Of a stretch of 64,000 bases of DNA, positions 20,515 through 50,508 are shown piece by piece. The notes under the pieces were generated by a model, which made no database searches, had not been told where the DNA came from, and saw only the letters and a list, made by a program, of their open reading frames with translations. Every line of letters starts with the position of its first letter. Position 1 is the stretch's first letter. The stretch covers positions 10,755,024 to 10,819,023 of the forward strand of contig OZ199840.1 in the NCBI GenBank assembly GCA_964304625.1, given 5' to 3'. Origin of the DNA: Kudoa neothunni (lineage: Eukaryota; Animalia; Cnidaria). A program made the translations under genes and the position numbers.

Positions 20515-23407
20515 ATGAAGCTATTATCTCACATTTTAGGAATATCATTAGTTATTTTTTGTAATTACACACATAATTCCAACACTTGCTTAATAAATTT
20601 TAGCAAAATTTTTTTTATTAAATGGGGATGCTCCAGCACAATCTGCTCCTGCCCCTGTCCCTGAATCTACTCAAAAAGCTCTCAGCTACACTATCCTTAA
20701 AGAAAGCGATGGAAATAAGGTTAAAATTACTTTAAGTGGCAGTGATTATACTTCTCCAAAATGTTATATGAAAAAATCTGAAGAAAATTCCGAAAATTAT
20801 GCGGAAATAAATGGATGCCCTGGAAATGATAGTGGAGCCTCTGGAAAATGTTTTAGAACCTGTTCCGGAGAAGACAATAAACTGACCTTCACTCAATTTT
20901 CCCCAAGGACCAAGTATGTAGCAGTTTTTACAGGGAGTGAAGCTGCAACTACCACTGGAAAATCTACAGGTGGAACAGTTTTTGGGCTCGAATTGCGTAT
21001 ATAATTATATATGTATTTATATAAAATAATATTAGGTTTATTGGTGAATCCGCAAGTAACAATAACAACTACAACTGCAACTTCAAATCCAAGAAAACTG
21101 AAATTAAGCACTGTCACATGCAAACAAGTTGCATGCCCCATATTTTACAAGGGAGTAAAATACGCAGATGGAACTGCTACAAATGATAGTACTAATGAGG
21201 TGGATTTTGATATGATGATACCTCATTACGAAATGAGATGTGAGAATTATCCAAGTTTTTTTTATAAACTGCAAAACAAATATACGTTGAAGGAAATGGA
21301 TGTTTATCAACCCCAATATTATGTTAAATTTAAAGACATTGATAAAACTAAATATCAAATAAAGTTTACTAATAAATTCCCCTTCGAAATATGTCGTTTC
21401 AGTATTAAGGAAGAGTCTACTGAAGTTAATGCGACTTCATCCAATGAATACACTTCAAATTGCGGCGGAACAGGGAAAGATTGTTATGCTCCTTGTAATG
21501 ACGTAGAATTAACATTCTCTGACACAAAAGTTCTGGTTGAAGTTATGATTCAAACAAGACATTTTCCTTTAGGAAAAGTTGATACAAATTACGTTGGATA
21601 CATACAAAAGAAATTTGGTAATAGATCATTATTTTTATTTTTAAATACTTGATATTAGTCATTACTAAGTCCCCCACCGCTGATGGGACGTTATTGTCCA
21701 CTTTCAAAAAAGATGGTGTCACTTTAAACGTTCCTTTATTTAATCCAACAGACAATCCTAAATTTGGAAGTTGCACGGTGACGCATTATGCAGCAGACAA
21801 ACCGGCTCCTACTAGCGGTGAAAGAACAAATTGTGTAAATTCTGGAAGTTCTGGTAGTACTCAATGCGGAGATACATGTACATCGGCTTTGACGATAACA
21901 GGATTATCTCCCGGAAAACCATATATATTTCTTATAGCAGCCGGAGTATCTGATGGAATAAAGGAAGGTTTTAAGGAAAAAATATTCTTTAGAACAGGTA
22001 TATAATTTTAATATTTAATTTATTGTAAAGTATGCTAAGAAAAAGAAGATTCAAAAACATTTCCTCCAGTAACACCAACGTTAAGTGAGACAGCGGCCTC
22101 AATCAAAGCCATATCTGGAGATGACACATTGACAAAAGATGACGCTACATGCGCCTATTATATTAGTCCACGCGGGAAGGATGTTTATGTTTGTGCAATG
22201 TGCATTGATAGTTATCCATGCCGAGGTTTATGCAGGGAAACTCAGACTATTGTTGGATTGAAGCCAGGAAGTGAGTATGACCTTAAGGTTGTTGCACATA
22301 AAGATTATGGGTTCAAAGTACATCCAATTACAACAAGTATATTAACTAAGATAAATTGAATGAGTTGATTTATAGCAAAATCAACATTCACATTAACAAA
22401 GGAATTTGTCGACAAGGGTTTCAAAATAGTAGGCACATTGTCTACACCTGATGCAGAGGCTAAATGCCACTACAACGTGGAAGTTAAGAAGGGAAATCAG
22501 TATACTTTAATTCACCAATGCCCCCAAGCACCAATTTCTCCAAAACCAGCTGAAACCCCTTCCAATAAATCAAAGCTTTCCAAAATTATGGTCGCTAGAT
22601 CAGCAACTGATTCGACTTCCCCTCAATCGAGAAAAACGACCTCAAATATGCCCACCTATTGCACTGAGCCTCCATCATGTTCTGAGATATTATTCACAAC
22701 TAATTATGATCGCTCTAAGAAATATCGTGTGGTGGTAACTAAGGCAGGAGCACACGACGCAAATATTGAAATTCCGGAAAGTAAAATTTTTGCTTTTATT
22801 AAAAAATTAAAATTTGTATTATAATATAATTATTATAATTAGATCCTATTGTAAAAAACCAAGATATAACTAAACAAATTATTATTAGCATTGAGCGTGA
22901 TGGAAACAAATTAAAGGTTACGTCGGCACTACCACAGCAATTCGCTGAGAACACATGTGGATGGGAATTAAGAGACTCAACCAATCCTGAGAACATTTTA
23001 GTTAAATCATGTAATGGAGAAAACGATGGAGGTTGTGAAACCCTTCCTAAATGCAAAGAATTTGAAATCACAAATGTTGAGGATACAAACGATTACCATT
23101 TGACAGTTTATGTTAGCAGTGATAAAACAATCAATGGAAATAGCCAAATTAAGAAAGGTATATGTGTTATATGCTTAAATTATCAAATTCTTCTTAGGAG
23201 AAAGTTACGACACAATGAAATCAACGTAATTTAGTTGTATTTATTTTTGTCTTTTATAACACTTATTTAGATCAAAAAACACTATGTAAATATATAATAT
23301 ATGTATTTGTAAATATTTAATGATTTAGAATAATAATAGTCGCAGCCGCTGTAGGTGTGGTTATTCTAGCTGCCGTTGCTGTGGTTTTCATAAAGAAAAG
23401 GAATTAA
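20515..23407 (+). CDS. Surface protein copy A: Cys-rich FN3-like type I membrane protein, 10 exons, 832 aa
   Basis: Introns 20561-20603, 20997-21035, 21618-21658, 21998-22039, 22337-22375, 22781-22842, 23158-23197, 23226-23270 and 23286-23328 give an in-frame 2499 nt CDS. Signal peptide MKLLSHILGISLVIFSKFFLLNG; FN3-like motifs FSPRTKY, GLSPGKPY, GLKPGSEYDLKVVA; TM and tail IIIIVAAAVGVVILAAVAVVFIKKRN*. Confidence 0.9.
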
Positions 23408-23749
23408 CCAGCGATTTATTATTTAATTACAGATTTTATTTATCAATTAATATAATATTTTAATAAATCATTTAATTTATATTTTCGTTTCTATAGCAAT
23501 TCTCTCTAAATTTTCAGTTAGCTCACTTAAAATATAGAAATTTTGTACCCATTTGAATAAGTTATAAAATAAAAAATAAAAAATCGTGTTTATCTCACTT
23601 AGATGCTTATATAATCCTAATAAATTATTTTATACAACAATATAATTTTAGTTGATTTATATTTAACTTAATTAGCTATGTATGATAATTGCAGAATTGT
23701 ATAATTAATTTTTACTCTCCAATGCGTAGAAATTTGAAAAAACCAATAT

Positions 23750-25400: not shown

Positions 25401-26399
25401 CGAAGAAGGCCGGAAAATTCGCGGAAAAATAAACGTCGAAATTAAAATTTTTTAAAAATTCGACGATTAAAATCGATTTTAATCGAAAACGGCAATGCCT
25501 ACTTATACGTAACTTCACAATTATCTCTAGTTCAGCAAAAATCTGGGAACCGTATATCATTTTAAAATATTTTTAAATCGATATCAACTTGAATATATTT
25601 CAATGAAAACACACAACAAATATTAAACATAAAAAGGTAAAATAAGTATTTGTGGTATTACTCAAATCCCAAAGATCTATTGTTAAAAAACATTCGTATT
25701 CCATGTTTTCTATTACTTTCTCAATATAAATTTTTCAATAAAAATAAGTTGCTGCCATTGCATCACCTCAAACAAAGAGGAGAGAAACCACCAACATGCC
25801 TGGGAGGAAATGAATCATATTTTGTGTTGATATAGAAAGTTTATTGATTTCGTTTTTAAGAATGAATTTTAAAGTATGATTTTATAAAAGTCCTTCAAAT
25901 AACAACAAAATAAGAGAATTTAGCTTGAGTTTTGTTTGTTACAAAAGAGTATTAATATTCGACATCATTATAATATAATAATTACATTAATACTATTTTC
26001 ATCAAAATATTTGTTTGAAACATAAAAGAATAAGATACTTACTTAATTTCGAAGTTGAACTTAAATTTGGGTCAAAGAAACGTCAGAATATTATTGTAGA
26101 TTTTAGTTTATTTAATTAAATCCATAACTTAATATTTATAATTCTATGTTCCATTAAAAATCAAGAATATGAAGAAAAAAATAAGTTTAATAATAAAAAA
26201 AAATATATATTACTTTTAACGGAGAATAAAAAATTGATGTTGAAAATTGATCAAACAAGAAAAAATTATATAAACTTATAAACATAACAAAGTTAAATTA
26301 ATATTAATAATAATCCGTCAAAAATAGTTTCATTCTTAGAGATCATCCACAATTATTAACTTTGTTAGTAACTGTTATTTTAATTAATTACAAATTTTC

Positions 26400-26900
26400 C
26401 AATTACTAATCATATTTTAAGCACATTTTAGGAGAAAATTTATCAAATAACGCTCAATAATTATCTCTAGTAGTGTAGTTTTTCGACAATAAAATTCATG
26501 ATATTAAAAATACTTATATAGCCTTACTTTGGATAAAATAAAAATGAAAAAATACTATGAGGATCGAGAAATTTTCAATATTACACATGCCAGAACAACT
26601 GTTTATAATGACTTATTGTTAATTTTTTTAATTATAATACCATGAAAAAATAAAATAAACCTTTTAGTGCACGAATTGTAATCACATTCATATTCCTTCA
26701 TAGTGGAATATAGAAACCAATGTTTAACATGAGGATTATGTTGCTGACTTCACCATCATGTATGCGATTTGAAGAAAAATTTTGATACGCTCCAGATGGG
26801 AAGAGCATATAAGATTTTTTAGAGCCGCTTTCGACGAAAAAAGTTGCAATGAAACTATAAAAATAGAGGAGTCACACGCCCCGCAATAACCCGCTTACGA
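26400..26900 (+). pseudogene. Relic coding-like segment; inverted paralog at about 45380-45960
   Basis: tatgcgatttgaagaaaaattttgatacgctccagatgggaagagcatataagatttttt matches the reverse complement of 45550-45610. Broken peptides WNIETNV*HEDY...HIRFF and WNTETSV*HRDY...HIRFFGTAPDGK. Confidence 0.45.
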
Positions 26901-29804
26901 CTTAAGTTAACTAAAACATAAATTTGTAAAAATTAAAAAATTTTATAGAAAAAAATGTAGTCACATGTTTTTAAATTCAGATTTGAAATATCTGAAGTAA
27001 GAAAAAAGATATTCATCGTCTTAAGAATCGACGGCCCCAGAAGGGATTATACGGTCTCGTTAGAATAGCCAGTGCCTTATTTAATTTAATATTCCATATT
27101 AGACAGAAAAAACAACTCTTATACAATAATTTCTAACAGATAAAATTCTTTTTTAGCATATATAATTTGTATGGGGGAAAATTAGGAATAGTTTATATTC
27201 TATTGAAATATTATTTATTTAGAGTATTCTGTAATATGAATACATATAGCAGGCAAAATGCATTGTTTTGATAATCCATCTACTATCTATATACAGTCAA
27301 GATTTTGTATTGCGTAATTTTTGGGACCGATAAAAAATTATTCAATATCGGGTCATATTGATTTTTACGTTACGCATTATTAAGTCAGGGGAACATAGAA
27401 AAAATATTTTTTAATTCTTTTTAAACGGAATAATTTATTAAACGAAATAAGGATAATGATTCAAAATTTAATTCCAATGCAATTATTTTCAACATGAAAA
27501 TTTTAAATTACTTATTAATGAATTACGATATATCCAATATCGACTATTTTTTAAATATTTAGGATGATACTTAGGCGCTGAGTATCTGTGTTGTTATAAG
27601 GGGGCATTATAGTTTATATCCGATAAAATAGTATTTTGAGCCAATGAATGTTCTTTTCTGAAGTTATGATATAGATAAATAAATTTCGCAATTTTTAAGA
27701 TTCCACAAAATTATCTTACTTTTAATTTCATAATCTCGATTGTTAAAGTATAATACTTAAAAAAAATTTTAAACTTTATCCTGACTATGGATTAAGTGAA
27801 AGTATTAGTGTATTTTTCAAACAAAAATATTTCTACTAAGAAATGAAACTGGGAATTTTGCTCCAATGCTTTTATATTTTTCTAATATAGAATGGTTATT
27901 CCATAGAAAAATGTTAGATCATGTTTTTTATGCGAGTGGAGTTAGCGATTTTCTTGTGACAGCATGATCATTGTCATGCAAAGAATTTAAGATAGAATAT
28001 ATTTTTATTTTTCCATGAGAGAACTTTTTGGTTACTTATTCGCCATAATTATCAAAAATAAATAATCAGTGCTGACATAATTGATGCCATTAAGAGTCTG
28101 AAAGTATCCCGAATAAAATTATCCTTATGAAAATTACAGATGATGATTGTCGACTATGCAATCATTCCACCTCTTGGCAAATCATGTAATGCCTATTACA
28201 ACTTAGGAACCGAACTCAGACTTTACCAGTTGGCTGAAACTAAAAATTCTAAAGCAGTTAGATGAACTCACGAAATTTCTCCATAGGTGGTGTGTCGATA
28301 AAGTTACAACCCAAGTGGTTTAGGCAACCGTTGATTTTTAATATTGCGATGAATTGAAATAATAATAATAATAAATACCTTGATGAGAATTTTAGACTTA
28401 AATAAATTGCCGTGTAAGAATGAATTTCAAAAAGACAACGCTACCAACGTTTTGGTGTCACCAAGTCAAATGATACCCCCATATTTCTCAAAAAGCTATG
28501 TAGGTATATACCATTTGTTCAACTTACCTATACAAATAATCTTTTTCAAGATTAATCAATAACGAATGTACGGTACTAAACTAACTTCATGTGAAGACGA
28601 TATGCGAGTGGCACCTTCTAAGACGACCCCGCATATTTCGGTGTTAGTTTTGAAAGAAAGCAACAGAAACCTCATTGATATTAAATACTCTTCGATTTTG
28701 TGCTAGAATTTTTTTATTTATGTCTTTTAATCTTTCGTCTGTTCAATAAGTTTTGTTCATTATTTTAAATAATTAAAATAATTATCTTATGAATTTAAAT
28801 TCACAGACATATTTCACAATCGCACAGCTCCATGCATTTGATAATGTTAAGAATCACTGGAATCGACTTGCATTTTTAAGTTAAATTACATATGTATAAT
28901 TAATACAATTTTAAGATAATAAATTTATATAAATAATTATCAGAAGATCAAAAGATAATAATAGTTGATATTATTACTATTTTTTCCTGGTTATAAAATT
29001 CAAATTGATGGAATGCGTAATGAAACTTTTTAGATAAATCATGAATAGAAGGTTTTAAATGCACAGGTTTTATGAATGGTGAGTTTATTTCGTACTCTCA
29101 AAATATTATGATAATAATTCTCACTCAAATTTTAGGAAAAATGAAGAATTGTAATATTTTTGAGGTACAACATACTTTACTGTTGTGATTACTTATGATA
29201 AAATCACGCAGAAAAAGGCTCTTTTTTGTTATTTTATAAACATAGAGTGAAAAATTAATTTTTCGCATTATTTTACTTTCGATCTTTATATAAAAATAAA
29301 AAAATATAATTATATTGAAGATAATAACAATGCAGTTTTCCCAACATAAAATTATTTTTAGGTAATTCAATTTAATTTGAATATCATTTTAGTTATAAAT
29401 TATACTTATTTTCTTAACATGGAAAAATAGATACATAATTTAGTTCTGATTAAAATAAGGGTTTATTGATTAAAATATTAATGAATCAATTAGGGATTTT
29501 ATGTTATGCTTAAATTCATTAGTATTAATACATTCATTCATTACATCATATTTAATCAATGAACGGTTAACATGAAGTATTGTTATTGTTTTTATGCTAT
29601 AATCATATCATACTAAATTAATATAATAAATTCATAATTTTCATAGGTTACTTAAATAAAAATTATATCGTTTATATTATATTCAACTTTAATTTAACTA
29701 GTAAATATTATAATGTTTGTTATATAATAGACTTCAATATAATTGAATAACCCTATTTGAACAAATGTAACGACAACTTCCGTGAGTAAATTAGACTCAA
29801 TACA

Positions 29805-32692
29805 ATGAAGCTACCATCTCATATTTTGGGAATATCGTTAGTTATTATTTGAAATTACACACATAATTCCAACAATTGCTTAATAAATTTTAGCAAATTT
29901 TTTTTTATTAAATGGGGATGCTCCGGCGCAACCTGTTCCCTCACCTTCTCAAAAAACTCTCAGCTACGCTATCGTCAAAGAAGGTGATGTTAAAAAGGTC
30001 AAAATTACTTTAAGTGGTAGTGACTATACTTCTACAAAATGTTATATCAAGAAGTCTGTTGAAAATTCTGAAAACTATACCGATATAAATGAATGCCCTG
30101 GAAATTCTGTAAGTGGAGCCTCTGGAAAATGTTTTAGAACCTGTTCCGGAGAAGACAATAAATTGACCTTTGATAAATTTTCACCTAGGACTAAGTACGT
30201 AGCAGTTTTTACAGGGAGTGACGCTGCAACTACCACTGGAAAATCTACAGGTGGAACAGTTTTTGGGCTCGAATTGCGTATATAATTATACTCGTATTTA
30301 TATAACATAAAATCAGGTTTATTGGTGAATCCGCAAGTAACAATAACAACTACAGCTGTGACTACAACTCCAAGAAAACTGAAATTAAGCACTGTCACAT
30401 GCAAACAAGTTGCGTGTCCTATATTTTACAATGGAGTACAATACGCAGATGGAACTGTTGGAACTAGTTGCACTGAAGCTAATCAGAATCATGAAGTAGA
30501 ATTCAATTTGATGATACCTCATTATGAAATGAGATGTGAGCATTACCCCAGTTTTTTTTATAAACTACAAAACATATATACGTTGAAGGAAATAGACGTT
30601 TATCAACCTCAATATTTTGTTAAATTTAAAGAAACTGATAAAACTAAATACTTAATAAAGTTTACTAATAAGTTTCCCTTTGAAATATGCCGTTTTAGCA
30701 TTAAAGAAGTTACTACTGCTGGAGCTGGTGCGACTACATCCCAACAATATACTTCAAAATGCGGCGGAACAACGCAAGATTGCTATGCTCCTTGTAATGA
30801 CGTGGAATTAACGTTCGTCGACTCAAAAGTTCTGGTTGAAGTTATGATTCAAACAAGACACTTTCCTTTAGAAAAAGTTGATGAAAAATACCTTGGCTAT
30901 ATACAAGAGAAATTTGGTAATAGATAATTATTCGTTTTTGAATGATCTCTGTTAGTCGTGACTGAGACCTCCACTACTGGGGGACAACTGTTGTCCACTA
31001 TCACCAAAAATGGTGTCACATTAAACGTACCTTTATTTAATCCAACCACAACCCCGAAATTTACCAGCTGTACAGTTACTCATTATGCAGCAGACGAACC
31101 GGCTCCTACAAGCGGTGCAGTAACAAATTGTGAAATTTCTGGTTCCAACTGTGGCGATAATTGTGCATCAGCTCTAACGATAACAGGATTATCTGCCGGA
31201 AAGCCATATATACTTCTTATTGCAGCTGCTGTTACTAATGGAATAAAGGAAGGTTTTAAGGAGAAAATATTATTTAGAACAGGTATATAATTTTAATATT
31301 TAATTTATTGTAAAGTATGCTAAGAAAAAGAAGATTCAAAAACATTTCCTCCAGTAACACCAACGTTAAGTGAAACAACGGCCTCAATCAAAGTCATACC
31401 TGGAGACGGAGCATTGATAAAAACTGACGTTACATGCGCTTATTATATTAGTCCACGCGGAAAGGATGTGTATGTTTGTGCAATGTGCATCGATAGCTAC
31501 CCATGTCGAGGCATATGCAAGGAAACTCAGACTATTGTTGGATTGAAGCCAGGAAGTGAGTATGACCTTAAGGTTGTTGCACATAAAGATTATGGGTTCA
31601 AAGTACATCCAATTACAACAAGTATATTAACTAAGATAAATTGAATGAGTTGATTTATAGCAAAATCAACATTCACATTAACAAAGGAATTTGTCGACAA
31701 GGGTTTCAAAATAGTAGGCACATTGTCTACACCTGATGCAGAGGCTAAATGCCACTACAACGTGGAAGTTAAGAAGGGAAATCAGTATACTTTAATTCAC
31801 CAATGCCCCCAAGCACCAATTTCTCCAAAACCAGCTGAAACCCCTTCCAATAAATCAAAGCTTTCCAAAATTATGGTCGCTAGATCAGCAACTGATTCGA
31901 CTTCCCCTCAATCGAGAAAAACGACCTCAAATATGCCCACCTATTGCACTGAGCCTCCATCATGTTCTGAGATATTATTCACAACTAATTATGATCGCTC
32001 TAAGAAATATCGTGTGGTGGTAACTAAGGCAGGAGCACACGACGCAAATATTGAAATTCCGGAAAGTAAAATTTTTGCTTTTATTAAAAAATTAAAATTT
32101 GTATTATAATATAATTATTATAATTAGATCCTATTGTAAAAAACCAAGATATAACTAAACAAATTATTATTAGCATTGAGCGTGATGGAAACAAATTAAA
32201 GGTTACGTCGGCACTACCACAGCAATTCGCTGAGAACACATGTGGATGGGAATTAAGAGACTCAACCAATCCTGAGAAGGTTTTAGTCAAATCATGTAAT
32301 GGAGAAAACGATGGAGGTTGTGAAACCCTTCCTAAATGCAAAGAATTTGAAATCACAAATGTTGAGGATACAAACGATTACCATTTGACAGTTTATGTTA
32401 GCAGTGATAAAACAATCAATGGAAATAGCCAAATTAAGAAAGGTATATGTGTTATATGCTTAAATTATCAAATTCTTCTTAGGAGAAAGTTACGACACAA
32501 TGAAATCAACGTAATTTAGTTGTATTTATTTTTGTCTTTTATAACACTTATTTAGATCAAAAAACACTATGTAAATATATAATATATGTATTTGTAAATA
32601 TTTAATGATTTAGAATAATAATAGTCGCAGTCGCTGTAGGTGTGGTTGTTCTAGCGGCGGTCGCTGTGGTTTTCATAAAGAAAAGGAATTAA
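29805..32692 (+). CDS. Surface protein copy B; exons open but first intron donor is GA (possibly silent)
   Basis: Same 10-exon layout as A. Intron 1 starts gaaattac at 29851, where A and D have gtaattac. Ends ...VAVVFIKKRN*. Confidence 0.8.
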
Positions 32693-33410
32693 CCAGCTAT
32701 TTATTATTTAATTACAGATTTTATTTATCAATTAGTATATTATTTTAATAAATCATTTAATTTATATTTTCGTTTCTATAGCAATTCTCTCTAAATTTTC
32801 AGTTAGCTCACTTAAAATATAGAAATTTTGTACCCATTTGAATAAGTTATAAAATAAAAAATAAAAAATCGTGTTTATCTCACTTAGATGCTTATATAAT
32901 CCTAATAAATTATTTTATACAACAATATAATTTTAGTTGATTTATATTTAACTTAATTAGCTATGTATGATAATTGCAACATTATATGATTAATTTTTCA
33001 TCAAAATTTGGAGTTATTAAGGATAACCATTATTTAGATTGATTGAAAATAAAAAAGATATGGAGAATGATTATGTTCATAGTAGTATAAGATGTGTATA
33101 GAAAAATGTTAACCCTCTAAGGCAGGGACTCTCAACCGGGGTAAATTTTAAATGACAGGGGTTAGATTAATTACCATCAAAATTGGATAGGAGAAATTTT
33201 TGTACAATGGGCTTGTGAGGTACTTAAGGATTCCTAAGGAACTATATTATTTAGGGCTATAAAACTCAATACGGTAGGTGACGGCTCGTGCGCACCTGCC
33301 ATGATTTAATGACTTACACTATAGTGCGTCTAATTAAAATGAATCGAATAAAAGCATAACAATTATAATAAATTATTAAAACCTTAGTTTTCGTTTTACT
33401 TTGTTGTATA

Positions 33411-36957: not shown

Positions 36958-37251
36958 GCTCGAGGGCAACTCGAACCCAATTCCTATTTTAATGCCCACG
37001 GCCTGTCACCCACTGTAATAAGAATTATCTTACTTAAGTTTTTTATAATAAATTTTTACGATATAACCATGCTTAAGATATTAATATTTTGAGCTGGAAA
37101 TTTGTTAATATAATTTGACCAGATTTCAAATTAATAAAAATTTAATTAGAATTAGAGACAAAAACAAGGAATTCGGGGTCAATATAAAAAGGAGACAAAT
37201 CTTATGAAATCGCATTATTTTATCTTTAAAGCCACATGCAAAAATTGAAAA

Positions 37252-39852
37252 GGTAATGAGGGAGTATCCATCTCCAAAAATTCATTCTTTTGCGCTTGTA
37301 AAAACCTACCGATTTTATTATAAATTGTCTTTATACATTTTTAAATATGTAGTAATCACAAATATCTTTAAAAATATCAGTTTAAAAAAATCAATAAAAA
37401 TGCAGCTTTGGTCATTATCGTAACGTGCGCACAACTTTGTGCGTCCTTTTTTGCGCTTTATTTCCCTAAGTTTCCATATATATGCAACTTTGAGACCATT
37501 AATATGTTCAATTTAATTAAATTTTATAATATCATTAGTATTATCAATAGATCTCTACTTTAGTTCTACATTTTGGGTATTAGATATAATTTTTGTGATT
37601 TTAATTATTGGTTTAAAAATTTTTATCAGAGATAAATTAATGAGTTATATTTAAAAGTTTCTGAAACAAGCTATCGACTGAAGCTTAGTAATGGTAGAAT
37701 TTAAGTCGCAGCACCAGTTTTACAAGCTGCTTCTAGATCAAGGAACATTGCTAAACTCCTTACCCAGGAACGGTCTATTGCAGAGAATGCCGAACAGGTG
37801 CAAGAATTGTCGTGGGTATAAAACCTATAAATTAAAGATTGAACGAAGGTTAAAAACAATTCCACAGATCTACAATTTATTTGTGAATCAGAAAAATCCA
37901 CTTATATTTGTTCAAAGTAATTTTATGTTACAGGAATTATTCTAGATATACTTGTAAGACATGTCTCTCTCTAAGAACCTCAACTCTCTTTGGAATTATG
38001 AATAAATTTCAAGACAATTCTTCAAAGTTATCGGTTTCCTATATTTTTGAGCTGGTTTATTTGTGGGCTATGGATGAGCTTAGACACCAGATGATCATTT
38101 TAACTGGAATAACAGGAAAAACTATTACATATTGGTACTCATCCTTAAGAAAAATTTGTTGGGAAAATTTTCAGCGGCGTGACAAGTTCGACGGAAAAAG
38201 AATTATTGAAATAGACGAATGACTTTTGGGGGAAACGGAAAAATAATCGTGGTAGGTACTTGGGAGCAGATGACTGGAGAAGCGCCCCTAATGAAACGTA
38301 TTCTCCATCATCATCATGATCTGATGATGACACGGATGATGATGCTGGTGGCACTAATGTCGAAAGATATAGGAAAGGAATAGAAGGTCCATGGGTAGTT
38401 GGAATTTATGAATGTTCCGTTGACGGTGAAGGTAATCGTAAATTTCTGGAGTAGATATTTTTTATTGTGGATCGAAGGGATAAATGTACCCTTATACCCC
38501 TAATTTTTCAAGAGGTATCACATGGCTCCACAATTTACACAGACGAATGGAAAGGGTACAAATGGTTAAGAATTTACGGATATAACCATATAGCTATAAA
38601 CTACTCAGAAGAATACGTTACAGATTACGGGGATCATACAAACACTGTAGAGGTTGTATGGCACCATTTAAAAACGAAGCTTTTGCGAAGGATGAGTGGT
38701 GTGCCGAAAGATATGCTTCAATTGTATCTGGCTGAGGAGTTATCACGATCGAAAAATGAAAATTCATGGGGGTTTTCGATTTTATTAGGAAAGAGATAAC
38801 AAGAATATATTCCATTAACAATAATAATAATGAAAATTAGTTTATTCAATTCTGTTGTACGATTCTTCTTCGATTTACGGACACACATTTAGTATCTTTT
38901 ATATAACAACAATTTAAACTTTGTTATATTGTATCATTAAGTTACGTACATTTAAAAATTATGGAGAATATAGTTTTCACTACGGAAATTTATTACCAAT
39001 ATTTTAAAAGTTAATCATTTGATCGATAGAACATAAGCTCTACCAAACGAATACACTAATGCGTTAAAAAACGATATATATTTTTGTATGCCGATAATTT
39101 TTTTTTATTCCATATAATATAAGTTGTTAACAAATTTATGACAACCATTGATTACTTTTTGGTTGTCTTGGGTGACGAAATAATAAAACTAAACAAAATG
39201 CTTCATTTTTAATATGTTTGCGTTCGTGTAGAGTCCAAAACTAGAGATCATTAAGTAACCTTCTCATTCAAAACGAATTCCTTTAATTATTAATGTTTCC
39301 ATTATACAGTAATTTATTAAATAATTTGTGAGTTTCTAATTCACTACAAATATGGGAAATATTATGATAGACACAATAATATTACAATTATTCGCAACGT
39401 TAAAAAAATAAATCACTAAGACAATTATATAAGCTAAAGTTAGTTGGTTTCGACATTTCTAATCAATTAAACTTTTATTTTTTAACGATTCTTTCTGGGT
39501 AGAAGTTAATTTAAATTCAAACAAATTATCTAAATCTATTACTGCTGAGTCAATTATGTTTTTCACCCATAAATGCTATAATATGACTAATTTGGAGATA
39601 ATGATAGCCGCAAAGTTGCATACATGTGGAAACTTAGGGAAATATAGCGCGAAAAAAAACGTACAAAGTTATGATCACGCTATAATAATGACCGAAACTG
39701 CATTTTTATTGATTTTTTTAAACAGATATTTTTAAAGATACTTGTAATCACTTTACATTTAAAAAATGTATAAAGAAGATTTATAATAAACTCGGTAGGT
39801 TTGCACAAGCGCAAAAAGGCGAATTTTTGGAGGTGGATACTCCCCCATTACC
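37252..39852 (+). mobile_element. Merlin (IS1595/ISXO2-like) transposon with ~245 bp TIRs, decayed
   Basis: Long imperfect TIRs starting ggtaatg.gggagtatcca.ctccaaaaattc; 8 bp TSD attgaaaa / attaaaaa. Peptides IIEIDE, GPWVVGIYE, TLIPLI...GSTIYTDEWKGY...HTNTVE..W. Confidence 0.92.
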
Positions 39853-39964
39853 ATTAAAAATAACAATAATTTCAGCTAACAACTTCCAATACCAAACAAT
39901 GCTACGTGATCAAATAATCTTATTAATAAATATTACCTATAAAATATAGTTAACAAAAATTAAT

Positions 39965-42960
39965 TTAATCTTTTTTCTTCTTCAATACTACGATTCCACC
40001 TATCGTTACGACCACAACCACAGCAACGCATGCAATAATGATTCTATAAAAAGGTTAGTTCATATATCAATATTTAAAGATGTTTACATAAGTTTAGTTT
40101 TATCCCTAAAAAACATTAAATAAAATTAAATAAAATCACTTTACTAAACTCACCCTGAGCTACTTTTAGCTCCTACGATATATAACATTAAATCACACTG
40201 TGAACAAATAATATACCTTGTTGTATGTCCGCACCACCGAAAATATTGTTATCTTGAGCACTGTAAACAGTCAAATAATAGTTATTCCAATCAGGTAAAT
40301 TATTTATTTTGAACTCTTTACAGGTTTCAAAGGCAGTGCATCTGTCTACATTTTTTCCCATGCAAGATTTTACTACCGCATTAGACTTGACACTACTGTT
40401 ACGTAACTCCCATTTGCATTTTGATTTATCGTTCATGCCGGCTGGGAGTGTGGTGGTTACAATGAAACTGTTCCCATCACGTGTAATGACGACTGATATC
40501 AATTTTGAGGAGTCAGTTGGGTTTACTTGTGGTGCACCTAATATAAGTTTCGTTTAAAAAATTCATAATAGAGACACTAATTGTAATACTTGATTCTATG
40601 ATATGCTCTTTTTGTGAAGATTTTCCGATAGCTGTGACTAAAATTTTGTATGTATTGGCTGCTTCATACTCGGGAAATGTTATGGAACTGCAAAGGGGAT
40701 TTGAAGAACATGTGTTAGTGCTTTTCGCGGCACCAGCACGTTGTGTATTTGAATTATCTGAAACTGACGATTTCGCCTTTGGCATTAGACCACCGTCTGC
40801 TACCATTGGTGTAGCAATTCTAGCTATACTGAGGTCTTTAGAACTTAATCTGGAAACAGGAACTGAAACGGGTGTTGGTGATACTGGGGCGGTAACAGGT
40901 GGCGTTACTTTCGGCACCACTGGACATGTGTAATAGTCTGTGTAATCGTTGCCAGTCTTCTTTTGTATGATATAACTGCATGTTGCACTTGGATCCACGG
41001 AATTTAATTGTGCCTTCAATGCCAAACCATCCAAGGTGATCTTGTGTGTTATCATTAAAGTTGTTAATGCTATTAAAAAATCATAGAATAAATTAAAACT
41101 TCAATAACCTGTTCGTATTTCTTTGTAATCTTTTATATCGTAGTCCATATGTGCGATCACTCTGATGTCATAAAGAGCGTTTGGTTCAAGGTCTTCTAGA
41201 GTAACTTGATCCCTGCAAATTCCTCTACACGGAGTGTTGCCATTACATTTCGCGGGATAAAAGCTATCTAATCCAGCTGGACTCATCAAATACTCACAGG
41301 TAGGTTCATTTTGTCTATTTTCGGGTGAATTTCCACCAACAGCTGTAAGAGAAACTGTCGTATCTGTCTTTGTAGGATCAGTAGTTTCATATGCTTTATC
41401 TCCCTTTTCTGTATAATTCATTATTTTATAAAATTATTATAATGATTTACTTGTTCTTATGAATATATTTTCTTTATAAATCGTTGAAACATCATCTCCT
41501 TCTAATGTGATCTCAATCATATAAGCTTTTCCCTCTGGAAGTTTCTCTATTGTCAATTTAGAGCAATTGGTGCTACATTTATCGTCGTCTGAACTAGCAG
41601 TGGAACATTTTGTTTCTTCTAGAGTGTCTGGTTTGATTTTGTCCGCAAAATAGTGTTTAAGAGTACATTTATCAATTTTCGGGTTATCAGTGCTTTTAAA
41701 TAGGGCACTATCAATTGACACTCCCTGGTGCGTGTACTCTGACAGGAATCCTTCAGTTGATCCAGTAATTGCTAAAGGAAATAAGAAAAAATTAACATTA
41801 ATATACGGATTACTGATTTTAGTTCGTTCGCAATCTCCGAAATTACCACTAGTAGGATTTATGTCGTGGTGCCTTGTTTGGATTAAAATTTTGTAAATCT
41901 TTTTACCCACAATGCCATTGAGTTCGACGTACTTACAAGGGGCGTAACAGCTCTTGTCGGCTTTACCACAAATTGATGTATATTTTAGATTGTTTGTAGT
42001 ATCCTGACCATCTTTTAGACTGAACAAGCATATTTCAGATGATAGCGAGTTAGTGAATTTAATTCCTACTTTGTCCCCAGTTTTGGCAACAATATAAAAC
42101 TGAGGCTTATAAATGTCTATGCTTTTCTTCATGTATTCATTAGGCATATTGTAAAAGAAACTAGGATAATTTTCGCATCTTACTTCATAATACGATAACA
42201 ATAAATCAAAATCAACAATGTTCAATGTATTATCACTAATACAATCGCCCCCCTTGGTACCATCTGCATATTTAATATCCTTATAATAAATAGGACAATT
42301 TACACGTTCACATGTTTTTGCTGCCAATTTCAGCTTATTTTTGCTGGCTGTTTCTGCAGAAAGAGACACGGTAATTTGTGGATTAACCAATAATGCTAAA
42401 TTCAATTTATTTTATTATTAGATAAAATGGATTTACGTATTGAATATCCGAATACTTTTGCTTCTGCCCCCTGAGTGATGTCTTTAATAGTATTTGTGTT
42501 CTCGCCTACGTAGACGAATATGTATTTTGTTCTTGGCGACAACTTTTTGTAATCAATAGTATTCGTATTAATGTCACAATCGACAACACATTTATCGGCA
42601 GCTTCACCATCGGTATTAGCAGTGCAGCTGTCGATGTTCATAAATGCAGCTGCTGGTGGTGCAGCCGAAGTACCAAGAGTGGACGCAATTTCTGCCTCGT
42701 TAGATCTCCTTAAAAGGCACTTTTTTCCATTTGGATATTCAGAGCCTCCAAGATTGATTTTAATTTTGTCTGAGCTATTAACTGTATCTTTCACAATCTG
42801 ATATGTCAGTGTTTTTGTTGTAGCCGGAGCCGCAGCAGGAGAACTTGGACTTGCAACAGCATTGGCTGAGCTTGATAATAAAATACCTATACTTACATCA
42901 GTATTAAAATTAACTCAGGAAGATACCTAAAACAAGGTAAAGAAATCCAGTTATTTTCAT
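39965..42960 (-). CDS. Surface protein copy C (divergent paralog), 10 exons
   Basis: Signal peptide MKITGFLYLVLGILLSSSANA. Shares LSPRTKY, LLVNPQIT, CPIYY...YADGT, YEVRCENYPSFFY, CYAPC, IQTRH and LEPNALYDIRVIAH with A. Microexons at 40154-40172 and 40088-40105; TM and tail IIIIACVAVVVVVTIGGIVVLKKKKD*. Confidence 0.9.
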
Positions 42961-43246
42961 GATTTTCAATTAAATGAGCTACCAATTGATGGTTCGGAAT
43001 ACAATTGACCCGAATTTCACTTATTTATGGATACAACGATTCATTCATTATCAGGTATAAAAACTTTGACTATATAATAATTATTCAAACTATTAACAAA
43101 TTATTTTAAACCAATTTTTTGTTATCTACCTCAAATCGGTGTGGTAAATTATTTAGAACTTTTAATGGAATCATAAGTTTTCCTACATTACATTGTTTTT
43201 AGAGTAATATCGAAGTAAAATATTAAGCTTTAGAAAAATAATGGTA

Positions 43247-45233: not shown

Positions 45234-47198
45234 AAATAATATTTATTATAGAGGGTATTTTGGGCTGAAATTTGATATACGCCACCCTTTACGCCCAGTT
45301 CAAAAAGAGAATTATTTTGTAATAAACGAGATTATATTTACTACTAACGATAAGTATGTAATAGTTAATAGTCATTCTAACACGATGTCATACATCACTA
45401 TTTGAAGAGCATTGATAAAACCATTCCACAAATCATTGCAGTTTTTTTCTCCTTCATAGAAATTCAGCAAGGAATTCGGGTAATGTGGAGCGTGTGGTTC
45501 CCCCATTTTTAGCGTTTTTACGACTTTTTCCGTCGGGAGCGGTTCCAAAAAATCTTATATGCTATTCTCATCTGGAGTGAATCAAAATTTTTCTTCTAAT
45601 CGCATATATGACAGTGTAGTAAACAATATAATCTCTATGTTATACACTAGTTTCTGTATTCCACCATGAAGGAATACGATTTTGAGTACATATTGTACAT
45701 CGAACTATTTTTTTATTTTTACATGATATCTTTAAATAAATTAGCAGTAAGTCATTATTGATGGCTGCTGTTCAGACATGTAGAATATTGAAAATTTATC
45801 CAGTCAAAACATTTTTTCTTAATTATAGCAATATAACTATTTTCAGTGTTACATATCTTCCCATTCGAAACGCTCTATCATTTAAGACAATTATTGAGTG
45901 TTAATTGGTAAATTTACTCCTAACTTTGACTTTAAAAAGTAATTATTAACTGGAAAATGTATAAACAACTAATGTATTAGTTCGAAAGAATGTCTAAAAA
46001 TTGAAATAATCTCCAGGAATGAATTTTCTTTGATTGGGAATAAATTCATGAAAAATAAACATAATTACACGATATAGATATAATTTTTTATTTTGATTTT
46101 TTTGATCTGCCATCTATTCAAGAACCATTCGTGTTTATTCATTTTAATAATAAAAATAATAATTCTATGAATATAAATTAACGAACAATTAGCACAATAG
46201 AAAGGTTCGATACACTTAAATACGATGGGAACCATTAAAATAGACTCAAGTTTTTTAAGTAAAATTTCATATGTATAATTGAAAAAAGTTTAAAATGATA
46301 AATTTATATAAGTAATTATCAAAAGATAGTAAAAAAATAATAGTAAGTTGATGTTATTATTATTTTACTAATTAGAAAATTAAATTTGATGTGATAATAA
46401 AAAGTGTGAGATAAATTGGGATTAAGGGATTTTAAATGTATCACTTTCATGAATGATGAAGTTATTTTTACATGCTCCAAATCCTATTATAATAATTCTC
46501 ACTCTAATTTTAGGAAAAATGAAGAATAATAATATTTTGGAGGTACGACATACTTCATTGTTGTGATATACTTATGATAAAATCAAGCAGAAAAATAATC
46601 GGAACTTAATTTTATAAACACATGGCGTGAAAAATGAATTTTTCGCATTATTTTATCTTCGCACTTTATACGAAAAACAAAAAATAAAATTATATTAAAA
46701 ATAAGAACATTTCAATTTTATCAGCGTTAAGTTATTTTAATGTACTTGAATTTAATTTGGATATCCATTTAGTTATAAATTATACTTATTTCCTTAATAT
46801 ATAAAAATAAATCAATTATTTAGTTCTAATTAAAATAAGCGTTTATTAGGTATAATGTTAGTGAATCAATTAGGGATTTTATGTTATGCTTAAATTCATT
46901 AGTATTAATACATTCATTCATTCATTCATCACATCATATTTAATCAATGAACGGTTTACATTAATTATTGTTATTATTTTGTATGCTATATTCATATCAT
47001 ACTGAAATAATATAAACTCTTAATTTTCAGAGGTTATTTAAATAAAAATTATATCGTTTATGTTATATTAAATTATGATTTAATTAGTAAATATTATAAC
47101 GTTTTTTATATAATAGACTTCAACGTAATTGAATAATTCTATTTGAACAAGTGTGACGGTGTGACGGCAACTTCCGTGAGATAATTAGATTCAATACA

Positions 47199-50088
47199 AT
47201 GAAGCTATTATCTCATATTTTGGGAATATCTTTAGTTATTATTTGTAATTACACAACTAATTATAATGATTTCTTAATCAAATTTAGCTAAATGCGTTTT
47301 ACTAAATGGAGAAGGTCCAGCAGCTGTTCCTGAATCTACTCAAAAAGCTCTAAGCTACACTATTGTCAAAGAAACCAATGGAAATAAAGTTAAACTTACT
47401 TTAAGTGGCAATGATTACTCTTCTTCAACAAAATGTTATATTAAAAAATCTGAGGAAAATGCCGAAAATTACGCAGATATAAGTGGATGTCCTGAAAACG
47501 CACATACTGGAGCCTCTGGAAAATGCTGTAGAACCTGTTTAGAAGGTGAAAATAAACTGACCTTTGATCAATTTTCACCAAGGACCAAGTATGTAGCAGT
47601 TTTTACTGGAACTGATGTTGGAACTGCCGTTGGGAAAACTACAGGTGGAACAGTTTTTGGGCTCGAATTGCGTATATAATTATATTTTTATTTATATAAC
47701 ATAAAATCAGGTTTATTGGTGAATCCACAAGTAACAATAACAACTACAGCTGTAACCACAAGAAAACTGAAACTAAGCACTGTTACATGCAAAAAAGTTG
47801 CGTGTCCTATATTTTACAAGGGAGTACAATACGCGGCAGGAACAATGGGAAGTAGTTGTACTGCTGCAAACGGTAGTGATAATGAGGTGGATTTTAATAT
47901 GATGATACCTCATTACGAAATGAGATGTGAACATTATCCCAGTTTTTTTTATAAACTGCAAAACAAATATACTTTGATGAATATGGATGTTTATAAACCC
48001 CAATATTACGTTAAATTTAAAGACATTGATAAAACTAAATATCAAATAAAGTTTACTAATAAATTCCCCTTCGAAATATGTCGTTTCAGTATTAAACTAG
48101 AGTCTACTGAAGTTAGTGCCGCTACATCCAAAGAATATACCTCAAATTGCGGCGGAACAACGAATGATTGCTATGCTCCATGTAATGACGTAGAATTAAC
48201 GTTTGATGCCTCCAAAGTTCTGGTGGAAGTTATGATTCAAACAAGACATTTTCCTTTAGGAAAAGTTAATAACAAATACCTCGGTTATATACAAGAGAAA
48301 TTTGGTAATAAATCATTATTTTTATTTTTAAATAATTGATATTAGTCGTGACTAAACCCTCCACTGCTGACGGAACGTTATTGTCTGCTTTCAAAAAAGA
48401 TGGTGTCACTTTAAACGTCCCCTTATTTAATCCAACCACAGCCCCGAAATTTACCAGCTGTACAGTGACACATTATGCAGCAGACGAACCGACTCCTACT
48501 AGTGGTGTAACAACAAATTGTGGAAGTTCTGGCAGTGGCAACTGTCAAAATGCATGTGACGCACCTTTACCGATAACAGGATTATCTCCCGGAAAACCAT
48601 ATATACTTCTTATTGCAGCCGGGGCATCTGATGGAATAAAAGCTGGTTTTAAGGAGAAAATATTCTTTAGAACAGGTATATAATTTTAACATTTAATTTA
48701 TCGTAAAATTCCTTAAGAAAATGACGAAACAAAAACATTTTCATCAGCGAAACCAACGTTAAGTGAGACAGCGGCCTCAATCAAAGCCATATCTGGAGAT
48801 GACACATTGACAAAAGATGACGCTACATGCGCCTATTATATTAGTCCACGCGGAAAGGATGTGTATGTTTGTGCAATGTGCATCGATAGTTATCCATGTC
48901 GAGGTTTATGCAGGGAAACTCAGAATATTGTTGGATTGAAGCCAGGAATTGAGTATGACCTTAAGGTTGTTGCACATAAAGAGTATGGGTTCAAGGTACA
49001 TCCAATTACAACAGGTATATTAACTAAGATAAATTGAATGAGTTGATTTATAGCAAAATCAACATTCACACTAACAAAGGAATTTGTCGACAAGGGTTTC
49101 AAAATAGTAGGAACATTGTCTACACCTGATTCAGAGGCCAAATGCCACTACAATGTGGAAGTTAAGAAGGGAAATCAATATACTTTAATTCACCAATGCC
49201 CACAAGTACCAATTTCTCCAAAACCAGCTGAAACCCCTTCCAATAAATCAAAGCTTTCCAAAATTATGGTCGCTAGATCAAAAGTTGATTCAACATCCCC
49301 TCAACCCAGCAAAACGACCTCAAATATGCCCACCTATTGCACTGAGCCTCCATCATGTTCTGAGATATTATTCACAACTAACTATGATCGCTCTAAGAAA
49401 TATCGTGTGGTGGTAACTAAGGTAGGAGCACACGACGCAAATATTGAAATTCCAGAGAGTACAATTTTTGCTTTTAATGATAAAATAAAACTGTTATTGT
49501 AATATAATTATTATACTTAGATCCTATAGTAAAAAACCAAGATATAACTAAACAAATTATTATTAGCATTGAGCGTGATGGAAACAAATTAAAGGTTACG
49601 TCTTCACTACCACAGCAGTTCGCTGAGAACACATGTGGATGGGAATTAAGAGACTCAACCAATTCTGAGAACGCTTTAGTTAAATCATGTAATGGAGAAA
49701 ACGATGGAGGTTGCGAAACCCTTCCTAAATGCAAAGCATTTGAAATCACAGGTGTCGAGGACACAAACGATTACCAACTAACAGTTTATGTTAGCAGTGA
49801 TAAAACAATCAATGGAAATAGCCAAATTAAGAAAGGTATATGTGTTATATGCTTAAATTATCAAATTCTTCTTAGGAGAAAGTTACGACACAATGAAATC
49901 AACGTAACTTAGTTTTATTTATTTTTGTCGTTTACAATACTTATTTAGATCAAAAAATACTATGTAAAATTAATATTGTTTATGTGTTTATAAATATTTA
50001 ATGATTTAGAATAATAATAGTCGCAGCCGCTGTAGGTGTGGTTGTTCTAGCGGCGGTCGCTGTGGTTTTCATAAAGAAAAGGAATTAA
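47199..50088 (+). CDS. Surface protein copy D, 10 exons, apparently intact
   Basis: Same exon layout as A with canonical GT-AG introns; MKLLSHILGISLVIISKCVLLNG...VAVVFIKKRN*. Confidence 0.9.
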
Positions 50089-50508
50089 CCAGCTATTTAT
50101 TATTTAATTACAGATTTTATTTATCAATTAATATAATATTTTACTAAATCATTTAATTTATATTTCCGTTTCTATAGCAATTTTCTCTAAATTTTCAGTT
50201 AGCTCACTTAAAATACAATATTTTTTTATCTATTTAAATTAGTTAAAATTAAAAAATCGTGTTTACATCATTTACTTTCTATGATGATCCTACCCATTTA
50301 TACAAAAATATAATTCTAGTCCCATTTATGCTAATTTGACTTGTTTAGCTATGCATGATAATTGCATTATATGATTAATTTTTCATCAGAATTTGGAATT
50401 ATTGGGCGTATTCATTATTTCGATTGATTGAAATTATAATAAGATATGGAGAATGATTATGTTCATTATAGTATAAGATGTGTATAGAACGACTTTAACC
50501 CTATAAGG

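What the first reader, a model, noticed from the sequence alone, without database searches (positions are those of the whole stretch)
21323..50096. Copies A, B and D are patchwork mosaics: repeated segmental gene conversion
The closest pair switches abruptly along the gene. A and D are identical over 21323-21408 / 48010-48095 and 22075-22175 / 48753-48853 while B differs. A and B are identical over 21988-22088 / 31273-31373 (including intron 4) while D differs. B and D share the 3' end of intron 2 (tataacataaaatcag), ccgaaatttaccagctgtacag in exon 4 and gttgttctagcggcggtc in the TM exon while A differs. A single duplication tree cannot produce this. Inference: ongoing ~100 bp-scale ectopic conversion shuffles variable segments, as in the trypanosome VSG, Anaplasma msp2 and Borrelia vlsE systems.
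Basis: partly seen in the sequence, partly recalled or inferred. Interest (0 to 1): 0.82.

Follow-up and report, generated by a model that had tools for sequence, protein, structure and literature searches.

The report
Gene-conversion mosaics in Kudoa surface-protein genes

Summary
The switching of the closest pair along the gene is far beyond chance. Pattern runs number 343 against 497±12 expected. The PHI test gives z = -15. Quartet sites support all three topologies (129/48/51), in blocks.

A, B and D are same-strand paralogues 9 to 27 kb apart. Each has 10 exons, introns of about 40 nt and an open reading frame of about 831 aa. Each encodes a signal peptide, Cys-containing FN3-like modules, one TM helix and a short tail. 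They belong to a family of at least 150 (353 candidates) copies in a 40.26-Mb genome that matches the published Kudoa neothunni assembly.

Tracts run from about 50-150 bp in the variable 5' half to about 1.4 kb of A=B identity in the 3' half. Introns and flanks follow the same mosaic. Silent divergence falls from 0.3-0.6 to 0-0.16, and pN/pS is about 0.34. This is DNA exchange, not selection.

The best reading is ordinary interlocus gene conversion in a tandem family. The VSG/msp2/vlsE analogy is not supported: A and D are complete genes, and no expression-site architecture or cis element was found.

The scan had already found the same phenomenon in other clusters of this genome.

The parts
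18289..23713 (+). Repeat unit of copy A. Gene from ATG 20515 to stop 23407: 10 exons, 9 introns of 39-62 nt, 832 aa.
   Evidence: Self-BLAST. Splice model solved by frame-consistent GT-AG search.
27587..32998 (+). Repeat unit of copy B. Gene 29805-32692, 831 aa, open frame. The intron-1 donor at 29851-29852 reads GA instead of GT, so B may not be spliced correctly.
46084..50383 (+). Repeat unit of copy D. Gene 47199-50088, 830 aa, all introns GT-AG. The B/D homology continues to 50658 / 33271.
40203..42821 (-). Copy C: a divergent family member on the opposite strand (25-43% aa identity to A). It has no DNA-level match to A, B or D and takes no part in the exchange.
   Evidence: Local tblastn. 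No blastn hit.
22236..23698 (+). Recent A=B tract (B 31521-32983). It consists of exact identity over 758, 342 and 243 bp, spanning exons 5-10, introns 5-9 and the 3' flank. Two small unconverted islands interrupt it: 22994-23003, and 23346-23455 (TM exon and the start of the 3' flank).
   Evidence: D differs at 96 sites across the three exact stretches (41, 21 and 34).
21988..22088 (+). A=B exact tract of 101 bp covering intron 4 (B 31273-31373). D differs at 17 sites.
22074..22235 (+). A=D tract. It is exact over 22074-22175 (D 48752-48853), and the HMM extends it to 22235. B differs at 13-18 sites, and copy E is also close.
21323..21408 (+). A=D exact tract of 86 bp in exon 3 (D 48010-48095). 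B differs at 11 sites.
21625..21660 (+). Short A=D tract over intron 3. Intron identity is A-D 95%, against A-B 71%.
19254..19543 (+). A=B exact tract of 290 bp in the upstream non-coding region (B 28524-28813).
20942..21009 (+). A=B exact tract of 68 bp at the end of exon 2 and start of intron 2.
   Evidence: local script only.
21757..21813 (+). Patch in exon 4 where A matches paralogue F (contig C1, 3.25 Mb) at 96%. B, D, E and the rest of the family are 75-83% alike here. It is a candidate inter-chromosomal conversion.
   Evidence: patch alignment; 12 concordant polymorphic sites in a row, 1/2000 permutations.
23346..23413 (+). TM-exon island where A alone differs. B, D, E, F and G share the other state, so the B=D identity here is ancestral.

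Best explanation
A, B and D, together with a fourth copy E that starts just past the window end, are tandem same-strand paralogues of a very large family of single-pass membrane proteins built from disulfide-containing FN3-like modules. The genome is almost certainly Kudoa neothunni, a myxozoan cnidarian parasite of tuna muscle.

Over evolutionary time, homology-dependent repair has copied stretches of one paralogue into another. This is non-allelic (interlocus) gene conversion.

Where the copies are already similar (exons 5-10, the membrane-proximal half), tracts are long and recent, and neighbours are homogenised: A with B, and D with E. Where the copies are divergent (exons 2-4, the membrane-distal half), only short patches of 50-150 bp get through, and each gene becomes a patchwork.

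Shown: the mosaic, its statistical support, its extension into introns and flanks, the intact reading frames, and the family size.

Inferred: the mechanism (conversion rather than double crossover), its direction, its recency, and the surface location of the protein.
For: - Exact identities.
- Clustering of site patterns.
- Quartet topologies in blocks.
- PHI z = -15.4.
- GENECONV-style longest runs: A-B 137 sites (0/2000), A-D 25 (4/2000), A-F 12 (1/2000).
- HMM tract map.
- Introns follow the mosaic: intron 3 is A-D 95% against A-B 71%; intron 4 is A-B 100% against 83%.
- dS is 0.3-0.6 in exons 2-4 and 0-0.16 in exons 5-10, with dN/dS of 0.2-0.65 throughout.
- All three ORFs are open.
- The nearest pair shares most: A-B, 9.3 kb apart, share 349 sites, against 198 and 170 for the other pairs.
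- The patches have a paralogue on both sides, so single crossovers cannot explain them.
- Family: 353 candidates, of which 150 were scored, all at E<=1e-61.
- FN3-like fold of the exon-5 module: pLDDT 90.4, with Foldseek hits almost all FN3.
- Genome identity: 40,260,978 bp in 4 contigs, introns of 39-62 nt in this gene and GC of 23-36% across the window, and one (TAAACC)n array at 12.04 Mb of C2. These match PMC12239612 (40.2 Mb, 3 chromosomes plus a mitochondrion, GC 30.4%, intron length 49 bp, that telomere motif, N50 12.0 Mb).
Against: - There is a single genome from a single sample.
- The assembly rests on only about 7x k-mer coverage of HiFi reads. A 200-N scaffold gap lies inside copy E right after the window end, so this cluster was not trivial to assemble.
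- Direction and non-reciprocity of the transfers cannot be read from three or four sequences.
- Some short HMM segments are probably noise.
Confidence: 0.85

Rival explanations
1. A programmed variant-antigen system of the VSG / vlsE / msp2 / ves1 type. Segmental conversion would happen somatically during infection and feed new variants into an expressed copy from silent donors.
For: - The family is large, with a predicted type I surface topology.
- The variable half is membrane-distal and the constant half membrane-proximal.
- Possibly silent or broken copies exist that stay nearly identical to neighbours. B has a GA donor. G has stops yet is 95-100% identical to F. About 8% of scored exon-3 hits carry stops.
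- Very recent tracts exist.
Against: - A and D are complete genes with start codon, signal peptide and about 1 kb of conserved upstream sequence, so there is no expression-site/cassette architecture.
- Conversion also homogenises the copies.
- No G4 motif was found at the tracts; boundary repeats were not looked for.
- pN/pS is about 0.34, with no clear window above 1.
- There are no expression data. No RNA run holds the gene.
- Somatic variation is untested.
Confidence: 0.08
2. An assembly artefact. The patches would be chimeric consensus between paralogues or haplotypes in a low-coverage meta-assembly.
For: About 7x HiFi coverage, a diploid parasite and purged haplotigs. A scaffold gap lies inside copy E. 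The reads check was not possible.
Against: - The assembly was built from PacBio HiFi reads. From general knowledge of HiFi read lengths (roughly 10-20 kb, not stated in the passages read), single reads should span the 2.9-kb gene and the 4.3-5.4-kb unit together with unique flanks.
- Chimerism at 100-bp scale between loci 9-27 kb apart that are only 75-90% identical is not a known failure mode.
- All three mosaics keep open frames, and 26 of 27 splice sites are canonical.
- Four separate runs hold 39-94% of the 31-mers of copy A. They are from the same sample, so this support is not independent.
- The reported assembly QV is 48.5.
Confidence: 0.04
3. There was no exchange. Regional differences in constraint or mutation rate, or convergent selection, would make different pairs look closest in different places.
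For: Divergence does vary by exon across the family. Exon 4 is the most variable and exons 3, 5 and 7 are conserved.
Against: Rate variation cannot switch the nearest neighbour. The tests condition on polymorphic sites only. Introns and intergenic DNA show the same switches. Synonymous divergence changes in steps.
Confidence: 0.01
4. Unequal crossing-over or partial re-duplication only. A few chimeric-gene events would account for the pattern, rather than many patch conversions.
For: The long A=B 3' block and the D~E 3' similarity could each be one crossover product. The unit boundaries differ between copies.
Against: There are at least 10 well-supported topology switches within 4.3 kb. Short tracts are bounded on both sides. 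Unconverted islands sit inside the A=B block. The downstream flanks of A and B diverge right after the tract.
Confidence: 0.02

Closest known systems
Interlocus (ectopic) gene conversion and concerted evolution in tandem multigene families (general phenomenon; e.g. MHC, KIR, globin clusters)
   Same: Same-strand paralogues a few kb apart. Patchy non-tree-like similarity, with tracts of tens of bp to about 1.5 kb. Introns are included. Closer copies exchange more. Tracts are long where identity is high and short where it is low.
   Different: The gene family and the host lineage (Myxozoa). In the literature searched, gene conversion between paralogues is not reported for myxozoans.
Plasmodium falciparum var genes (ectopic or mitotic recombination making mosaic genes)
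   Same: A large family of complete genes, each with its own upstream region. The extracellular part is variable and the membrane-proximal part conserved. Mosaics arise by recombination among members, including members on other chromosomes (the A-F patch).
   Different: There is no evidence here for mutually exclusive expression, subtelomeric location, cytoadhesion or exposure to antibody. The fold is different (FN3-like, not DBL/CIDR).
Segmental gene conversion systems: Trypanosoma brucei mosaic VSG, Borrelia vlsE, Anaplasma msp2, Babesia bovis ves1
   Same: Short segments are copied between related sequences to give patchwork coding regions.
   Different: Those systems have an expression site fed in one direction by silent or partial donors, at high rate during infection, and often with defined cis elements. 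Here no expression-site or silent-donor layout was found in the window and no G4 motif was seen; the direction and rate of transfer, and flanking repeats, were not tested.
Candidate variant surface families reported in the myxozoan Sphaerospora molnari (VSP-like, RIFIN/STEVOR-like; bioRxiv 10.64898/2026.02.11.705288)
   Same: An expanded, lineage-restricted membrane-protein family in a myxozoan, proposed for immune evasion. MULE transposons are abundant there, and a MULE fragment lies at 62980-63984 in this window.
   Different: A different protein family. The preprint does not mention fibronectin or gene conversion.

Membership tests
Interlocus gene conversion among paralogues | Homologous sequences at distinct loci of one genome | tested here: met
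   A, B and D lie at 18.3-23.7, 27.6-33.0 and 46.1-50.4 kb on the same strand, with different flanks.
Interlocus gene conversion among paralogues | Significant phylogenetic incongruence along the alignment | tested here: met
   Runs, max-chi2, longest-run, quartet and PHI tests are all beyond 2000 permutations.
Interlocus gene conversion among paralogues | Tracts bounded on both sides (patches, not single crossovers) | tested here: met
   For example, the A=D tracts 21323-21408 and 22074-22175 and the A=B tract 21988-22088 each have a different nearest pair on either side.
Interlocus gene conversion among paralogues | Non-coding DNA takes part (this excludes convergence by selection) | tested here: met
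   Introns 1, 3, 4, 6, 8 and 9 and the upstream and downstream flanks follow the mosaic.
Interlocus gene conversion among paralogues | Non-reciprocal transfer with an identifiable donor and recipient | not testable with these tools
   This needs population or isolate data, or ancestral states. The outgroups only suggest that A is the recipient of the F-like patch.
Programmed antigenic variation by segmental conversion (VSG / vlsE / msp2 / ves1 type) | One expression site and an archive of silent, usually truncated or promoterless donors | tested here: not met
   A and D are complete 10-exon genes with ATG, signal peptide and conserved upstream DNA. The apparent truncation of E is a 200-N scaffold gap. 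B has a mutated first donor and G is a pseudogene, so silent copies do exist, but no cassette layout does.
Programmed antigenic variation by segmental conversion (VSG / vlsE / msp2 / ves1 type) | High-rate somatic change during infection | not testable with these tools
No same-species isolate was found.
Programmed antigenic variation by segmental conversion (VSG / vlsE / msp2 / ves1 type) | Dedicated cis elements at the recombining region (70-bp repeats, 17-bp direct repeats, G4) | tested here: inconclusive
   There is no G4 motif anywhere in the window and no GC bias in the tracts. Other kinds of element were not searched exhaustively.
Programmed antigenic variation by segmental conversion (VSG / vlsE / msp2 / ves1 type) | The product is a surface-exposed, antibody-targeted antigen under diversifying selection | tested here: inconclusive
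   Topology is predicted only (hydrophobic N-terminus, one TM helix, a tail ending KKRN). Overall pN/pS is 0.34, with windows near 1 only around the exon 4/5 border.
Fibronectin type III-like domain proteins | FN3 beta-sandwich fold of the modules | tested here: met
   This holds for the exon-5 module only. The AF2 model has pLDDT 90.4 and pTM 0.81. Foldseek top hits are almost all FN3 domains or monobodies, with TM 0.5-0.67 and weak E-values of 2e-3 to 1e-2. A profile search against PDB gives titin/fibronectin FN3 at E 4e-6. Pfam fn3 matches are below threshold. The exon-3 module model failed (pLDDT 40).

The most novel reading that the evidence does not exclude
The family of about 350 FN3-like membrane-protein genes is a true variant-surface-antigen system of a metazoan (cnidarian) parasite. 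Segmental conversion among full, silent and broken copies, including copies on other chromosomes, would create new variants during infection of the fish. This would be functionally convergent with var/VSG systems of protists.
Probability: 0.1. Interest if true: 0.85.

Novelty: new member of a known kind. Interest (0 to 1): 0.45.

Why it matters
Myxozoans are economically important fish parasites, and how they deal with host immunity is poorly understood.

A family that may hold several per cent of the roughly 5,300 predicted genes would be a concrete candidate for host-parasite interface variation in this phylum. Its predicted products are single-pass surface proteins with a variable distal half, and its members keep shuffling segments.

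The mechanism itself is textbook, and the scan has already reported the same phenomenon in other clusters of this genome. This window therefore adds a clean, well-quantified example. It shows polarity of tract length and unconverted islands, gives a hint of inter-chromosomal exchange, and includes a possibly silent copy. It is not a new principle.

Tried and rejected
- **Read-level check.** From then on, no letters of 20997-21033 were sent to any search tool. Exons 2 and 3 were queried beside that stretch.
- **Exon-3 module structure.** The model was poor (pLDDT 40.5), so no fold search was made on it.
- **Pfam on the exons.** Only sub-threshold fn3/DSCAM-Fn3 hits and a chance MAP10_N hit were found.
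- **Relatives in 1.84 billion representative proteins.** There were 15 short ORF fragments. The two contigs looked up are only about 70% identical in DNA to this genome, so they come from other species and are useless for an isolate comparison.
- **Recombination cues.** No G4 motif and no GC-biased conversion signal were found.
- **Positive selection.** None was detected by sliding pN/pS.
- **Donors elsewhere in the genome for odd segments.** B 31374-31520 has no closer donor. A 21100-21270 is closest (85%, with a shared length variant) to a copy at C3:4.916 Mb.
- **Spliced protein.** No search was made with a joined (spliced) protein. Exons were searched one by one by reference, and that joined step was left out.
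- **Literature.** No paper was found linking Kudoa or Myxozoa to paralogue gene conversion or to this family.
Full report
**What is there**

A self-comparison of the window shows three same-strand repeat units, pairwise about 85% identical:
- A at 18289-23713
- B at 27587-32998
- D at 46084-50383

Each unit holds a gene of 10 exons and 9 very short introns (39-62 nt). I solved the model by a frame-consistent GT-AG search and lifted it onto B and D through the alignment:
- A: 20515-23407, 832 aa
- B: 29805-32692, 831 aa
- D: 47199-50088, 830 aa

All three frames are open. Every intron is GT-AG except intron 1 of B, whose donor reads GA, and no in-frame alternative donor exists.

The product has these parts:
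- a hydrophobic N-terminus
- six exon-sized modules, with 4, 7, 4, 5, 4 and 4 cysteines
- two juxtamembrane micro-exons
- one TM helix and a five-residue basic tail

A fourth member, C, lies on the opposite strand at 40203-42821. It is too diverged (25-43% aa identity) to match at the DNA level.

A fifth member, E, begins just beyond the window end. It looks 5'-truncated only because a run of exactly 200 N, a scaffold gap, sits there.

**Check of the observation**

I classified the 751 polymorphic, ungapped columns of the shared unit by which pair agrees. A=B accounts for 349, A=D for 198 and B=D for 170. Permuting the order of polymorphic sites gave these results:
- Runs number 343, against 497±12 expected (0/2000).
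- The longest runs are 41, 13 and 9 sites, against permutation means of 8, 4.7 and 4.2.
- The max-chi-square statistics lie beyond all permutations for all three patterns over the whole unit.
- The signal survives removal of the long A=B block (178 runs against 244±8).

I then added the closest outside paralogue as an outgroup. This is F (L004), on contig C1, 78-80% identical.
- The quartet-informative sites split 129 (AB|DF), 48 (AD|BF) and 51 (BD|AF). They come in blocks, with 70 runs against 134.5±6.4.
- My implementation of the PHI test gives z = -15.4 for the unit and z = -9.4 for the variable half.
- Counting only blocks of at least 5 consecutive concordant quartet sites leaves 10 topology switches, where 0.26 are expected.

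One tree cannot fit the alignment.

**Anatomy of the mosaic**

An HMM and an exact-match scan agree on the robust tracts.

| Pair | Tracts (A coordinates) |
|---|---|
| A=B | 19254-19543 (upstream, non-coding); 20942-21009; 21988-22088 (covers intron 4); 22236-22993; 23004-23345; 23456-23698 |
| A=D | 21323-21408; 21625-21660 (intron 3); 22074-22235 |

The last three A=B tracts add up to about 1.34 kb without a single difference. Across the same three stretches D differs at 96 sites.

Introns track the mosaic:
- Intron 3 is 95% A-D but 71% A-B.
- Intron 4 is 100% A-B but 83% A-D.
- Intron 1 is 95% A-B but 77% A-D.

Synonymous divergence is 0.3-0.6 in exons 2-4 and 0-0.16 in exons 5-10. dN/dS stays at 0.2-0.65 throughout, and overall pN/pS is 0.34. 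The contrast between the halves therefore reflects different coalescence times of the DNA. It does not reflect different protein constraint or convergence.

The closest copies share most: A and B are 9.3 kb apart. In the 3' half, D pairs with its neighbour E at 97-99%. E's first 87 bases are 97.7% identical to B, against 78% to A and 75% to D.

The recent A=B block contains two small islands:
- At 22994-23003, B keeps a variant of its own.
- In the TM exon, A keeps a variant of its own.

These islands fit either separate events or patchy mismatch repair of one heteroduplex. That interpretation is inference.

In the TM exon, the state that B and D share is also carried by E, F and G. A is the odd copy, so the B=D identity there is ancestral.

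In exon 4 (21757-21813), A is 96% identical to F on another chromosome. B, D, E and 15 other family members are 75-83% alike there and resemble each other. The A-F run of 12 concordant polymorphic sites was reached in 1 of 2000 permutations. This points to an occasional inter-chromosomal exchange.

A's exon-3 segment 21100-21270 is closest (85%, with the same length variant) to a copy 5.9 Mb away on the same chromosome.

**What the gene and the genome are**

Pfam gives only sub-threshold fn3 hits.

For the exon-5 module:
- A profile built from 24 paralogues finds titin and fibronectin FN3 domains in the PDB, at E = 4e-6 and weaker.
- Its AlphaFold model is confident (pLDDT 90.4).
- Its Foldseek neighbours are almost all FN3 domains or monobodies, with TM 0.5-0.67 and weak E-values.

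The exon-3 module could not be modelled.

An exon-3 profile finds 353 candidates in this genome. The 150 that were scored are all at E ≤ 1e-61, lie in clusters on all three large contigs, and about 12 of them carry stop codons. The same profile finds only 15 short fragments among 1.84 billion representative proteins. The two I traced come from other species.

The genome matches the published Kudoa neothunni assembly, which was recovered from yellowfin tuna HiFi data (PMC12239612).

| Feature | This genome | Published assembly |
|---|---|---|
| Size | 40,260,978 bp in 4 contigs | 40.2 Mb, three chromosomes plus a mitochondrion |
| GC | 23-36% across the window | 30.4% |
| Introns | 39-62 nt in this gene | intron length 49 bp |
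| Telomere | a single (TAAACC)n array at 12.04 Mb of contig C2 | (TAAACC)n at one chromosome end; N50 12.0 Mb |

That paper does not describe this family or any exchange between paralogues. Neither did any other paper I could find.

**Mechanism and rivals**

The best explanation is repeated interlocus gene conversion in a tandem family (confidence 0.85). The mosaic and its statistics are shown. The direction, recency and exact repair pathway are inferred.

- A and D are complete genes with their own upstream regions.
- There is no cassette layout and no G4 motif.
- Conversion homogenises as much as it diversifies.
- No positive selection was detected.
- Possibly silent copies do exist. B has the GA donor. 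G has stops and frameshifts yet is 95-100% identical to F outside exon 4.

A var-like or VSG-like use therefore remains possible but untested, at about 0.1.

An assembly artefact is unlikely, at about 0.04.
- The assembly was built from PacBio HiFi reads. From general knowledge of that read type, such reads are several times longer than the units.
- Reading frames and splice sites are intact.
- Four runs hold 39-94% of copy A's 31-mers.

No search was made with a joined (spliced) protein. Exons were searched separately by reference.

**Relation to earlier notes of this scan**

Follow-ups on other windows of the same genome had already reported three things: gene-conversion mosaics in this family, the Kudoa neothunni assignment, and a family size of at least 150. 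I re-derived each point independently here.

This window is another, well-resolved instance of that phenomenon.

**Verdict**

- The gene family is undescribed and lies in an unusual lineage.
- The antigenic-variation reading is unproven.
- Interest is 0.45. Novelty: a new member of a known kind.

Noticed in passing
L006:1297-1496 (= 200 bases right after window position 64000): A run of exactly 200 N sits inside copy E of the family. It looks like a scaffold gap, but withheld stretches also read as N in this tool. E therefore looks 5'-truncated only because of this N run; its exons 4-7 contain no stop codons in the local tblastn, and later exons were not checked. E's first 87 bases are 97.7% identical to B 30958-31044.
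   Followed up: partly
window 29851-29852: The first intron donor of copy B is GA instead of GT, and no in-frame alternative donor exists. Read-through hits a stop after 15 codons. B may be a freshly silenced copy whose 3' 1.4 kb is identical to A.
   Followed up: partly
L004 / L005 (G000:C1:3.25-3.27 Mb): The paralogue pair F/G is 95-100% identical over most of the unit but only 77-81% in exon 4. G carries a stop in exon 3 and frame breaks in exons 4, 6 and 7. A pseudogene has thus stayed almost identical to its intact neighbour.
   Followed up: partly
window 37249-39855: Inverted repeats 37249-37526 and 39577-39855 (83%) flank an ORF (38467-38799) with an ISXO2-like/IS1595 DDE transposase domain (E 7e-15). 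This is probably a DNA transposon sitting between copies B and C.
   Followed up: no
window 62980-63984 (-): A 334-aa ORF with a weak MULE transposase match (E 6e-5, below the Pfam cut-off) lies at the very end of the contig, next to the gap in copy E. A 2026 preprint reports that MULE elements are expanded in several myxozoans.
   Followed up: no
window 54474-55280 and 59941-60745: A 0.8-kb inverted repeat (90% identity) flanks minus-strand ORFs at 57237-59429 that have no Pfam match.
   Followed up: no
window 21100-21270 vs G000:C3:4916072-4916242: This exon-3 segment of A is closest (85%) to a family member 5.9 Mb away, with which it shares a 15-18 bp shorter length. Neighbours B and D are only 80-81% alike here. 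This is either an old long-range exchange or a retained ancestral variant.
   Followed up: partly
window 26329-26891 vs 45478-46023 (inverted); 4754-4918 vs 13190-13347: Further dispersed repeats (72% and 84% identity) lie between the family members. They are unexplained.
   Followed up: no
window 5652-6077 (+), 15710-16186 (+): Housekeeping genes lie upstream of the cluster: ribosomal protein S12/S23 (E 5e-19) and a NUDIX hydrolase (E 5e-17).
   Followed up: no
window 23198-23285: Two micro-exons (28 and 15 nt) lie between the last FN3-like module and the TM exon. They are needed to keep the frame open in all three copies, and are identical in A and B.
   Followed up: partly
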